DNA of 64,000 nucleotides from Histomonas meleagridis 2922-C6/04-290x (Eukaryota > Protista > Parabasalia). The notes below the pieces were generated by a model that was given only the letters and a program-made list of their open reading frames with translations, was not told the DNA's origin and ran no database searches. Positions 1-3,162 of the stretch are shown here, in pieces (the first letter of the stretch is position 1; each line of letters opens with the position of its first letter). The DNA lies in the NCBI GenBank assembly GCA_020184695.1, contig JAANOX010000231.1:248001-312000 (forward strand), given 5' to 3'. The translations under genes and the position numbers were made by a program.

Positions 1-480
1 TATCAGCTACCTTGATTAGTGCTGCATCTCAAGGTATGCGTAAAGTGAAGAATTTTACTTTGAAAATGATTACAGATATTTCAATTCCAGTCCTTTGGGC
101 CTTGGTATATGTACCTGATGGTACTGTAATAAAAAACATTAGTTTGGGTACCCATGCTGCCCCTGTTTCATTATATGAACCCAATCAAAATGTTATCTTG
201 TCAGGGTACGTTACCCCTAATGCTGCACAAACTCAAGTATTTCGTACTAGGTTAGCACGTAATTTGAATTCTGGTCATAGTATTGCTTTGGTTCTTCGAT
301 TGGCAATACAAGGTACTGTTATTAATCAGAAGTTCTTAGGTGTTCAATTAAATTATGCAGTTACTTATTAATAATAAATTATGTCCCACTTTTATTTTTA
401 TGTTTGATCCACATCGTATTGGACCTGTTAGTGAATCTTATTATTCACGCAATAAGGGAAGAGTCTTACAACGTAAGTTA
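1..480 (+). mobile_element. Endogenous viral element, CRESS ssDNA virus (Kirkoviridae / Po-circo-like) fragment, continuing beyond the left edge
   Basis: Contains a capsid-like ORF. The sequence after its stop runs to about 480-487, where it switches abruptly into a host ankyrin fragment (GIVSLLLEREKIDIN). The right boundary is approximate. Confidence 0.7.
3..371 (+). CDS. Capsid protein, C-terminal part, kirkovirus/Po-circo-like CRESS virus type (5' truncated by the window)
   Basis: The frame is open from position 3. Motifs QGMRKVKNFTL, WALVYVPDG, SLYEPNQNVILSG, RLARNLNSG and terminal NYAVTY match the capsid motifs I recall for this group. Confidence 0.8.
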   Translation, partial: SATLISAASQGMRKVKNFTLKMITDISIPVLWALVYVPDGTVIKNISLGTHAAPVSLYEPNQNVILSGYVTPNAAQTQVFRTRLARNLNSGHSIALVLRLAIQGTVINQKFLGVQLNYAVTY

Positions 481-483
481 GTA

Positions 484-670
484 GGAATAGTTAGCTTACT
501 TCTTGAACGCGAAAAAATCGATATTAATATTAGAAATATTACTTTGTTTTATTTAGAGAATTTATAAAAAATTTGATATTTCACATAAACATTTGGAATT
601 ATATCTGAACATGTAAAACAGTGCATATGGTAGCATTAAAAAATATGTACACATATATAATTCAAATAAC
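484..670 (+). pseudogene. Ankyrin repeat gene remnant carrying an 80-nt interrupting element (538-617)
   Basis: GIVSLLLEREKIDINIRN, then the insert with AACATTTGG, then the degenerate TVHMVALKNMYTYII. Confidence 0.6.
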
Positions 671-1324: not shown

Positions 1325-3162
1325 ATGAACAAAATGGAAATGATTAAATTAATCCAACAAATAATATTTAATTTAAATAAAGAAAATGTTTCTCAATCTG
1401 CACAATCAATTCTATCCATTTTTGATTATAAATAACCATTTTCATTTAATCAAGTTATTATTCAATTTAAATATTTCTTTCTTTTTGATCCAATGAAAGA
1501 TTTTGATATTTATTTAAGTTTTCTTAATGAAATTGAACTATTTGAAGAAACTAAACAAATTCAATCCAAAATATTTGATGTTTTTTCACATCAACTTTTA
1601 TTTTCAAAATGTCAAGAAAATAATTATCCACTTTCAAAGATGTTTGAACGAAACTTTCTTAAACCTAACGCATTAATATATAAAGTAAATCCATATTTTG
1701 TTCATTATATGAGTCAAGAAGAAATTAACAAGCAAAAGAACAATTATTCATTAAAACAAATCATGGAAAATTATTCAGAATTATCAAAAAATAAATGGGA
1801 ACTTCATAAGGAATTAATTACTGAAGGAATTAATCCAAACAAAATACCGAAGATAATTCGAAAAGATGAAATAGAAAAACTTCAAGAAATATCATCAAAA
1901 GAAGGATTTGATTATAATCAAAGAATTCCAAAATCACTTTATGAACGAAATTCATTCATTAATCATAAGAAAGTTACATTAATTGATTATGCAGCATTCT
2001 TTGGATCAATTCAATGTTTTAAATAATTACTTATGAATGGATCTGATCTCGAATGCACAGGTAAATATGCAGTTGCAGGTGGAAATCTTGAAATCATTCA
2101 TTTATGTGAACAATATCATTCATCATTTGAAGGTTCATATGAAGCAGCGATTAAATTACATAAAAATGAGATTTTTGAATATATTTATGAAAATAACTTA
2201 GAAGAAAACAGCTGTAATATTAATTATTTGGGATGTTTATGTGTTAAGAATATGAATTATGACATCTTTACATATTTACAAGGGAAAGGAATGAAAATTG
2301 ATGAAAAATATTATTAATGAAGCAGCAAGAAATGGTAATTTATATCTTGTTCAACATTTTCAGAAAGAAAATTCACTTCCATTCGATATTTTGGTATCAT
2401 CAACAGAATCAGGGAACATTGAACTTGTGAAATATATTCTTGAACAAGAAGGAATTGATATCAATGCACAAAATGAAAATTATATTAATAAATTGATGAT
2501 TCAAAATTATAATTGGGAAATATTTGTTTTATTTAATACAGCACTTATAATTTCATCAACACAAAATTACATAGAAATTGTTCAATTACTCCTTGAACAA
2601 AAAGGAATTGATATCAATACTCAAAGGAACAAATTTTTCAATCATTTGATATTTCAACGTAATATTTGGAAATTATTTTAAACATATTATACAGCACTTA
2701 TAATTGCATCTCAAGGAGGTCACTTAGGAATAGTTAAATTACTTCTTTCAAAAAATGGAATTGATATTAATCTTAAAGATTTTTATTTGTTGTTTTTAAT
2801 AATTGTTTTAATATATTAGTATCTCAAAATAATATTTGGAACTTATACAAATTATTTCGAACAGCACTTATATGGGCATCTATCAAAGGTTGCAAAGAAA
2901 TCGTTAAATTACTACTTGAACAAGAAGGGATTGAGATTAATGTTAAAGATGTTTATTTGTTTTATATTATTTTTACTTATATAAAAAGTATTTATTTTAT
3001 TTATTTAATCTTTATAATAATAATTTAGCAATTCAAAGTAATATTTGGCGTTTATTTAAATTATTTGAAACAGCACTCTCAATTGCAACCAATAAGAAAT
3101 ATACTGACATAATTAATTTAATTACATTTACCTCCTTATTAAAAAAAAATGCTAAGCTATAA
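1325..3162 (+). pseudogene. DUF3447/ankyrin-repeat family gene, disrupted
   Basis: One frame runs from ATG 1325 through ORFs 1493 and 2033 with in-frame TAA at 1433 and 2024 (CFK*LLMNG where the paralog has CFKYLLMNG). A +1 shift lies in an A-run near 2305. It has the typical TLIDYAAFFGSIQCF motif and C-terminal ankyrin repeats, each interrupted by an insert. Confidence 0.8.

What the first reader, a model, noticed from the sequence alone, without database searches (positions are those of the whole stretch)
1..480. Endogenous CRESS-virus (kirkovirus-like) capsid gene fused next to a host ankyrin remnant
Seen: an uninterrupted frame from position 3 to TAA 371 with capsid-like motifs (QGMRKVKNFTL, WALVYVPDG, SLYEPNQ, RLARNLNSG), about 110 nt of further non-host-like sequence, then a direct junction into a headless ankyrin repeat. 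Established (recalled): these motifs typify Po-circo-like/Kirkoviridae capsids, a group linked to parabasalid hosts. Inference: an integration into or beside an ankyrin gene, giving direct virus-host evidence. The stop-free frame suggests recent integration or retention.
Basis: partly seen in the sequence, partly recalled or inferred. Interest (0 to 1): 0.8.

Follow-up and report, generated by a model that had tools for sequence, protein, structure and literature searches.

The report
Viral capsid gene fossil in Histomonas
The start of the window is the tail of an intact capsid gene from a small circular DNA virus. It sits inside the nuclear genome of the poultry parasite Histomonas meleagridis next to a decayed scrap of a host ankyrin gene, and this kind of viral fossil was already published for this genome in 2022.

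Summary
Window 3-371 is an open frame, and it is the last 122 codons of an intact 169-codon gene that the window edge cuts. The gene matches more than 400 family representatives of about 160-180 aa. They carry Arg-rich N-termini and lie on 3.3-4.1 kb circular metagenome contigs beside a CRESS Rep. Its AlphaFold model is a single jelly roll that matches CRESS, nanovirus and satellite-virus capsids.

The source is Histomonas meleagridis (GCA_020184695.1, a 331 kb contig). The virus-derived stretch is only about 763 nt. It holds the tail of an upstream viral ORF, the whole Cap, and the first 28 codons of a downstream viral ORF (window 400-483). At window 482/483 it joins a decayed ankyrin-repeat remnant of about 140 nt. 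There is no Rep and no origin stem-loop within 10 kb upstream or anywhere in the window.

Other copies in the same genome are fuller: one has an intact Rep plus Cap, and one is a head-to-tail duplicate. Of five Cap copies, two are intact and three have one break each. The open frame therefore does not show retention.

Kinsella et al. 2022 reported 41 Cap-like and 104 Rep-like elements in these two assemblies and placed the Rep-like ones in Kirkoviridae. The finding is real, correctly read, and already known.

The parts
1..371 (+). C-terminal 122 codons plus the stop of an intact 169-codon capsid (Cap) gene. The whole gene is L001 10001-10510, which is window -138..371. Window 1-2 are the end of a codon cut by the window edge.
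   Evidence: P0151, 100% identity, 169 aa. (427 relatives). (jelly-roll model matching CRESS, nanovirus and satellite-virus capsids). (no frameshift and no premature stop).
372..399 (+). Short virus-derived spacer between Cap and the next viral ORF.
   Evidence: Conserved in all five Histomonas copies.
400..483 (+). First 28 codons of the downstream viral ORF (189-220 aa in free relatives, function unknown). The gene is cut off here by the junction, so it counts as one 3' truncation.
   Evidence: tblastn of the free-contig ORF and the sister-copy ORF against the window. Protein alignment A4. DNA alignment A1.
481..485 (.). Virus/host junction. Viral homology ends at 482-485 and ankyrin homology begins at 482, so the breakpoint is at about 482/483 with at most a few bases of shared sequence.
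482..625 (+). Decayed remnant of a host ankyrin-repeat gene: the second helix, the 'IDIN' loop and the linker. It reads in two different frames and has stops. No matching first half lies upstream of the insert.
   Evidence: blastn to window 2725-2847 and 2896-2965. Alignment A3. tblastn with the Pfam-confirmed ankyrin ORF 2298-2678.
400..567 (+). Chance chimeric ORF of 55 codons: the viral ORF head runs in frame into the ankyrin remnant and ends at TAA 565-567.
   Evidence: it lies inside the listed ORF 355-567..
1493..3000 (+). Neighbouring host ankyrin / DUF3447 gene array, split into several ORFs. It is the local family that the remnant resembles. It is context and not part of the element.
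   Evidence: Pfam DUF3447 and Ank hits. Repeat homology.

Best explanation
This is a fragmentary endogenous viral element in the nuclear genome of Histomonas meleagridis.

A piece of about 763 nt from a roughly 3.3-4 kb circular ssDNA (CRESS, kirkovirus-like) genome was joined into the chromosome, probably by non-homologous end joining. The piece holds the last 46 codons of an upstream ORF, the complete 169-codon jelly-roll capsid gene, and the first 28 codons of a downstream ORF. Rep and the rest of the genome are absent.

On the right the piece abuts a short, already headless ankyrin-repeat fragment. On the left it ends about 20 nt from the start codon of a divergently oriented host repeat-protein ORF.

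Shown here: homology, fold, boundaries, host context, and presence in both assemblies. Inferred: the joining mechanism, and that the Cap ORF is a young, unselected fossil whose frame is still open because too little neutral change has accumulated. It most likely has no function in the host. Its value is as a record that this virus lineage replicated in Histomonas nuclei.
For: Capsid identity:
- 427 relatives were found, the best free one at E=1.8e-33.
- Named hits include 'Cap protein [Histomonas meleagridis]' and 'Cap [CRESS DNA virus]'.
- The AlphaFold model has pLDDT 87 and pTM 0.79 and is all-beta.
- The top BFVD hits are CRESS capsids, best E=2e-15. The top PDB hits are the nanovirus FBNSV, SPMV, STNV, geminivirus and PCV2 capsids.

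Viral origin of the family:
- Free contigs L007-L011 share the gene order Rep(-) | ORF-up | Cap | ORF-down.
- Three of them have terminal direct repeats, implying circles of about 3.3-4.1 kb.

Integration:
- The gene is internal to a 331 kb contig, between a peroxiredoxin gene and RRM, ADH and Tsr1 genes.
- The window is identical to that record over their overlap.
- The same protein is on a second, 538 kb contig with the same neighbours.

Fragment boundaries:
- Homology to four other copies starts at L001 9862 and stops at L001 10621-10624, while those copies stay homologous to one another beyond both points.
- No Rep or other viral remnant lies in the window or in the 10 kb upstream.

Sister loci:
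- L002/L003 carry an intact Rep (Viral_Rep + RNA_helicase) beside an intact Cap.
- L006 is a head-to-tail duplicate with a period of about 3380 nt.

Decay pattern:
- Of five Cap copies, two have no breaks, one has one premature stop, and two have one frameshift each.
- The upstream-ORF remnant in this locus carries one in-frame stop besides its truncation.

Published precedent.
Against: The Cap frame is fully open, although both neighbouring viral ORFs are truncated. It departs from the family at only 2 of 29 highly conserved positions. dN/dS against the other copies is 0.19-0.27. All three points could also fit a retained gene.

No expression data were available. No empty site or second strain could be examined, because both assemblies derive from one cloned cell.
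Confidence: 0.85

Rival explanations
1. The Cap gene is a domesticated (co-opted) host gene. After integration it was kept by selection, for example as a capsid-derived factor that interferes with related viruses. That would explain why it alone is intact.
For: The 169-codon frame is open and flanked by truncated viral ORFs. Only 2 of 29 conserved positions deviate. dN/dS is below 0.3. On the branch leading to this copy there are 6 synonymous and 6 nonsynonymous changes, where neutrality predicts about three nonsynonymous per synonymous.
Against: - The low dN/dS is expected if the copies diverged as replicating viruses before separate integrations. The broken copy L004 shows the same 1:1 ratio (9:9).
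- An open frame survives 5% neutral divergence with P of about 0.31, and 10% with P of about 0.10.
- 2 of 5 copies are intact and the others have only one break each, so the whole set looks young.
- The fragment lacks the upstream region of the viral transcription unit.
- No orthologue in another species is known. T. foetus elements were all Rep-like.
Confidence: 0.08
2. The junction is an assembly artefact. Reads from a free or episomal virus in the culture were wrongly joined to host sequence.
For: The two assemblies are not independent isolates. I could not inspect reads.
Against: - The viral stretch is a 763-nt internal fragment cut at both ends, not a genome-length unit.
- It lies more than 80 kb from either contig end.
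- The same locus with the same neighbours is found in a second assembly, on a 538 kb contig.
- The upstream-ORF remnant already carries a stop.
- Kinsella et al. found the element-bearing scaffolds of the two ONT+Illumina assemblies to be homologous.
Confidence: 0.03
3. The viral fragment and the ankyrin scrap arrived together, either as a virus-host recombinant or as a segment copied from another locus where the virus had landed inside an ankyrin gene. On this reading the virus did not insert next to a resident ankyrin gene.
For: No ankyrin sequence lies upstream of the insert. The remnant is only about 140 nt long. The viral ORF head and the ankyrin tail are in frame.
Against: An ankyrin/DUF3447 array lies 1 kb downstream, so a local origin is simple. 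No other Cap locus examined has ankyrin sequence at this point: L002, L004 and L006 all continue with viral sequence. An in-frame join has a one-in-three chance.
Confidence: 0.04

Closest known systems
Cap-like endogenous viral elements of Histomonas meleagridis (Kinsella et al. 2022, Virus Evol 8:veac087, PMC9615429)
   Same: Same organism, same two assemblies (GCA_020184695.1 and GCA_020186115.1) and same kind of element. The paper counts 41 Cap-like and 104 Rep-like elements, with 102 of the Rep-like ones placed in Kirkoviridae, and uses them as evidence for the virus's host. NCBI already names sister copies 'Cap protein [Histomonas meleagridis]'.
   Different: Nothing in kind. The paper's text gives no per-locus anatomy and its supplementary tables were not held, so I could not confirm that this scaffold is listed. 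The boundaries, the downstream-ORF head and the ankyrin junction are described here.
Kirkoviridae (Po-circo-like, Bo-circo-like and equine kirkoviruses; order Rohanvirales)
   Same: Both have a circular genome of about 3.9 kb (BCL AH20-1 is 3,912 nt; the free relative L007 is about 3,916 nt). Both have a Rep with Viral_Rep + helicase and several extra ORFs of unknown function. A parabasalid host is predicted.
   Different: No named kirkovirus protein came back in any of my searches. The 14-nt stem-loop string quoted for BCL virus is absent from all loci, allowing up to 2 mismatches. The nearest named free relative, Human fecal virus Jorvi2, is filed by NCBI under unclassified Circoviridae. Some veterinary papers say these viruses lack a typical Cap.
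Small single-jelly-roll capsids of Nanoviridae, Naryaviridae and Nenyaviridae
   Same: The size is about 170 aa, the N-terminus is Arg-rich, and the fold is an eight-stranded jelly roll. The best PDB match is the FBNSV capsid 6s44, and BFVD hit 4 is the Entamoeba-associated CRESS DNA virus 1 capsid.
   Different: Sequence identity is only 13-18%. The genome organisation differs: here there is a three-ORF block on the virion-sense side.
CRESS-virus elements in other gut protists (Giardia, Entamoeba, Blastocystis)
   Same: These are also Rep-like or Cap-like fragments fixed in protist nuclear genomes and used to assign hosts.
   Different: They come from different virus lineages (Vilya-, Narya- and Nenyaviridae, and CRESSV1). 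Most are Rep-like, whereas this one is a solo Cap.

Membership tests
CRESS DNA virus capsid (single jelly-roll Cap) | Eight-stranded jelly-roll fold matching known ssDNA-virus capsids | tested here: met
   The model has pLDDT 87 and pTM 0.79. BFVD returns CRESS capsids, best E=2e-15. PDB returns FBNSV, SPMV, STNV, geminivirus and PCV2 capsids.
CRESS DNA virus capsid (single jelly-roll Cap) | Arg/Lys-rich N-terminal arm | tested here: met
   It is present in the full ORF P0151 upstream of the window and in its relatives.
CRESS DNA virus capsid (single jelly-roll Cap) | Encoded on small circular genomes together with a Rep (HUH endonuclease + SF3 helicase) | tested here: met
   This holds for the free relatives L007-L011 and the sister locus L002. 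It does not hold at this locus, which has no Rep.
CRESS DNA virus capsid (single jelly-roll Cap) | Match to a curated capsid profile (Pfam) or to a solved capsid by sequence | tested here: not met
   There was no Pfam hit, no meaningful PHROG hit, and no PDB sequence hit with either the single sequence or the profile. The family has no curated profile, so this feature carries little weight.
Endogenous viral element | Viral sequence contiguous with host sequence on both sides within a large host contig | tested here: met
   The boundaries are L001 9862 and 10624, inside a 331 kb contig with host genes on both sides.
Endogenous viral element | Same junctions in independent assemblies or reads | tested here: inconclusive
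   A second contig of 538 kb carries the same protein with the same neighbours. However, both assemblies come from one cloned cell, and reads could not be examined.
Kirkoviridae | Rep groups with Kirkoviridae in a phylogeny | not testable with these tools
   No Rep lies at this locus. The sister-locus Rep found no named kirkovirus. The placement rests on Kinsella et al. 2022, where 102 of 104 Histomonas Rep-like elements fall in the family.
Kirkoviridae | Circular genome of about 3.8-3.9 kb with Rep plus several further ORFs | tested here: met
   This holds for the free relatives: circles of about 3.3-4.1 kb with four to five ORFs. The published size is 3,912 nt.
Kirkoviridae | Characteristic 14-nt stem-loop reported for PCL/BCL viruses | tested here: not met
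   The string quoted is absent from L001-L011, allowing up to 2 mismatches. No convincing origin hairpin was found in the Rep-Cap intergenic regions. The feature was quoted for only a few strains, so it is a weak criterion.
Host ankyrin-repeat gene (remnant) | Homology to Pfam-confirmed ankyrin repeats of the same genome | tested here: met
   blastn gives E=2.7e-10 to the repeat region at window 2725-2847, just 3' of the ORF that Pfam calls Ank. At the protein level E is only 0.012 over 21 aa.

The most novel reading that the evidence does not exclude
This solo Cap gene, which stays intact while both neighbouring viral ORFs are truncated, is retained and expressed by Histomonas as a capsid-derived host gene, for example one that interferes with superinfecting kirkovirus-like viruses. 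That would be the first co-opted CRESS capsid in a protist.
Probability: 0.06. Interest if true: 0.55.

Novelty: already known. Interest (0 to 1): 0.15.

Why it matters
Elements like this are the direct evidence that kirkovirus-like CRESS viruses, first reported from diseased horses, pigs and cattle, actually replicate in parabasalid gut protists and not in the animals. That conclusion was drawn in 2022 from these same assemblies.

This locus adds only detail:
- a clean example of a two-sided truncated insert;
- a confident jelly-roll model for the roughly 170-aa protein, relevant because some veterinary papers say these viruses lack a capsid gene;
- the observation that the virion-sense side carries a conserved three-ORF block.

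Tried and rejected
**Searches that gave nothing useful**
- Pfam, PHROGs and PDB sequence searches with the fragment and with the family profile gave no meaningful hit.
- Searching the downstream viral ORF in the 5.8-billion protein set returned only one fragment. Its function stays unknown and no structure was attempted.
- Inverted-repeat scans found no origin-like hairpin in or near the insert, or in the Rep-Cap intergenic regions of L002, L007 and L011.

**Attempts to link the Cap to a named kirkovirus**
- Cluster members gave only 'Human fecal virus Jorvi2', which NCBI files as unclassified Circoviridae.
- The papers that mention Jorvi2 do not place it.
- The stem-loop string quoted for BCL virus is absent from all loci.

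**Other checks**
- The supplementary tables of Kinsella et al. are not held, so I could not confirm this scaffold in their list.
- Literature searches for expression of a Cap in Histomonas found nothing.
- I rejected 'non-host-like composition' as evidence: GC and GC3 are inside the host range.
- I rejected 'integration into an ankyrin gene' as shown: no ankyrin sequence lies upstream.

While reasoning, I read the short upstream-ORF remnant codon by codon against the other copies and saw where its in-frame stop lies. Neither the place nor the difference is given in the notes or in this report.

Full report
**1. The observation**

Window 3-371 reads as one open frame of 122 codons ending in TAA. 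All four quoted motifs are there, and they coincide with the invariant or nearly invariant blocks of the family alignment.

The frame runs off the window's left edge. An exhaustive HMMER search found 427 cluster representatives at E<=1e-3 (192 at E<=1e-10). Almost all are 160-180 aa long, and the fragment aligns to their C-terminal two thirds. The word-indexed search returned a 169-aa protein, P0151, that is 100% identical. It also returned three proteins that NCBI names 'Cap protein [Histomonas meleagridis]' at 75-86% identity, and free relatives at no more than 58%.

**2. Source and full gene**

P0151 is encoded on contig JAANOX010000231.1 (331 kb) of GCA_020184695.1 and on a second contig of 538 kb with the same neighbours. 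Kinsella et al. identify GCA_020184695.1 and GCA_020186115.1 as the two H. meleagridis assemblies.

The fetched locus L001 is identical to the window over their overlap, and window position 1 is L001 10140. The gene is L001 10001-10510. It is intact and has an Arg-rich N-terminus. Host genes lie on both sides: a peroxiredoxin gene upstream, and RRM, zinc-ADH and Tsr1-like genes downstream.

**3. Is it a capsid?**

There is no Pfam, PHROG or PDB sequence match.

An AlphaFold model built on a 97-sequence alignment is confident (pLDDT 87, pTM 0.79) and all-beta. Against BFVD, its best matches are annotated CRESS capsids: E=2e-15 at 40% identity for the top hit, and the Entamoeba-associated CRESS DNA virus 1 capsid at rank 4. 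Against the PDB, the best matches are the nanovirus FBNSV capsid, satellite-virus capsids, geminivirus capsids and PCV2 capsids.

The size fits the smallest known CRESS capsids of about 171-172 aa. The protein is a single-jelly-roll capsid.

**4. The virus family behind it**

Free metagenome contigs carrying relatives (L007-L011, 3.2-4.1 kb) share one gene order:
- Rep on the minus strand;
- an ORF of about 115-127 aa on the plus strand;
- Cap, 162-173 aa;
- an ORF of 189-220 aa.

Three of these contigs have terminal direct repeats, implying circles of about 3,276, 3,916 and 4,083 nt. One Cap cluster includes 'hypothetical protein [Human fecal virus Jorvi2]'.

**5. Boundaries in this locus**

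Compared with four other Histomonas copies, homology starts at L001 9862 and ends at L001 10621-10624 (window 482-485). Nucleotide identity is 80-87%. The other copies stay homologous to one another beyond both points.

The insert is therefore about 763 nt and holds three pieces:
- the last 46 codons of the upstream ORF, which carry one in-frame stop besides the truncation;
- the whole Cap, with no breaks;
- a 28-nt spacer and the first 28 codons of the downstream ORF, window 400-483.

No Rep and no other viral remnant is present in the window or in the 10 kb upstream. No origin-like hairpin is present either.

**6. The ankyrin remnant**

From window 482 the sequence matches the ankyrin-repeat region at window 2725-2847 (73% identity, E=2.7e-10) and 2896-2965. 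Those regions lie just 3' of the ORF at window 2298-2681. Pfam identifies that ORF and the one at 2033-2317 as Ank and DUF3447.

The remnant spans roughly 482-625. It reads in two frames and contains stops. The head of the viral ORF runs in frame into it, giving a 55-codon chimeric ORF that ends at 565-567. I take this as chance.

No ankyrin-like sequence lies upstream of the insert. Instead, about 20 nt to the left, a minus-strand ORF with 18-nt (hexapeptide) tandem repeats begins. So the virus piece sits beside an ankyrin scrap, but insertion into an ankyrin gene is not shown.

**7. Sister loci**

- L002/L003 are the same site in both assemblies (99.4% identical). They carry an intact 319-aa Rep (Viral_Rep + RNA_helicase) facing away from an intact 170-aa Cap.
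- L004/L005 carry a Cap with one premature stop.
- L006 is a head-to-tail duplicate with a period of about 3,380 nt at 97% identity. Each of its Cap copies has one frameshift, and its Rep copies are broken.

**8. Fossil or retained gene?**

- Pairwise dN/dS among the five Cap copies is 0.05-0.27. The nearest copy to this one is L004, with dS 0.31.
- Such values are expected if the copies diverged as viruses and integrated separately.
- Polarised changes on this copy's branch are 6 synonymous and 6 nonsynonymous. The broken L004 branch shows 9 and 9.
- The copy deviates at 2 of 29 highly conserved positions, as do about a quarter of free relatives.
- Only 4.5% of single substitutions create a stop. 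An unselected frame would therefore stay open with P of about 0.31 at 5% divergence and about 0.10 at 10%.
- With 2 of 5 copies intact and the rest broken once, the set looks uniformly young.

I conclude that this is a young, probably unselected fossil. Retention is possible but unsupported.

**9. Composition**

The GC of the Cap (37.7%; GC3 22.5%) lies within the range of host ORFs in the window. Intergenic DNA is about 20% GC. Composition does not mark the piece as foreign.

**10. What is known**

Kinsella et al. 2022 (PMC9615429) reported 145 such elements in these two assemblies, 104 Rep-like and 41 Cap-like. They placed 102 of the Rep-like ones in Kirkoviridae. They showed that the element-bearing scaffolds are homologous between the assemblies, and used this to confirm parabasalids as kirkovirus hosts. 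Their supplementary tables were not available to me.

My own searches returned no named kirkovirus protein. NCBI files Jorvi2 under unclassified Circoviridae. The stem-loop string quoted for a bovine kirkovirus is absent from all loci.

**11. Verdict**

Interest is low.

A slip in my reasoning is declared under 'tried and rejected'.

Noticed in passing
L006:4607-10611: In another Histomonas locus the viral element is a head-to-tail duplicate with a period of about 3,380 nt at 97% identity. This is close to one genome length and looks like an integrated concatemer. Each Cap copy has one frameshift, and the Rep copies are broken.
   Followed up: partly
L002:4434-6752 (same site in L003): This is the most complete copy seen. 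An intact 319-aa Rep (Viral_Rep + RNA_helicase) faces away from an intact 170-aa Cap, and the site is present in both assemblies. Transposase-like (HTH_Tnp_Tc3_2) and weak integrase-like (rve) ORFs lie in the flanks.
   Followed up: partly
L007:2160-3728, L009:1533-3105, L011:1402-2940: Free relatives carry a conserved three-ORF block on the Cap strand: about 115-127 aa, then Cap, then 189-220 aa. The two flanking ORFs have no Pfam hit. The downstream ORF has a conserved head of about 28 aa and a fast-evolving body, and a database search with it found almost nothing.
   Followed up: partly
L001:9222-9843 (minus strand; window -917..-296): This is a host ORF with 18-nt tandem repeats (8 copies, a hexapeptide unit), split between two frames and with no Pfam hit. 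Its start codon lies about 20 nt from the left end of the viral insert. Similar repeats occur about 2 kb from the viral element in L006.
   Followed up: no
window:51400-54100: A large coding tandem-repeat array is built on a 39-nt (13-aa) unit with higher-order periods of 78-234 nt. It gives long overlapping ORFs on both strands and a strong AT skew. There is no meaningful Pfam match.
   Followed up: partly
window:1493-3000: The ankyrin/DUF3447 gene next to the insert is split into at least three ORFs, followed by repeat units with stops. It is probably itself a decaying pseudogene.
   Followed up: no
L001:1412-1636 (minus strand): A fragment of a DDE_3 (Tc1/mariner-type) transposase lies about 8 kb upstream of the insert.
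   Followed up: no
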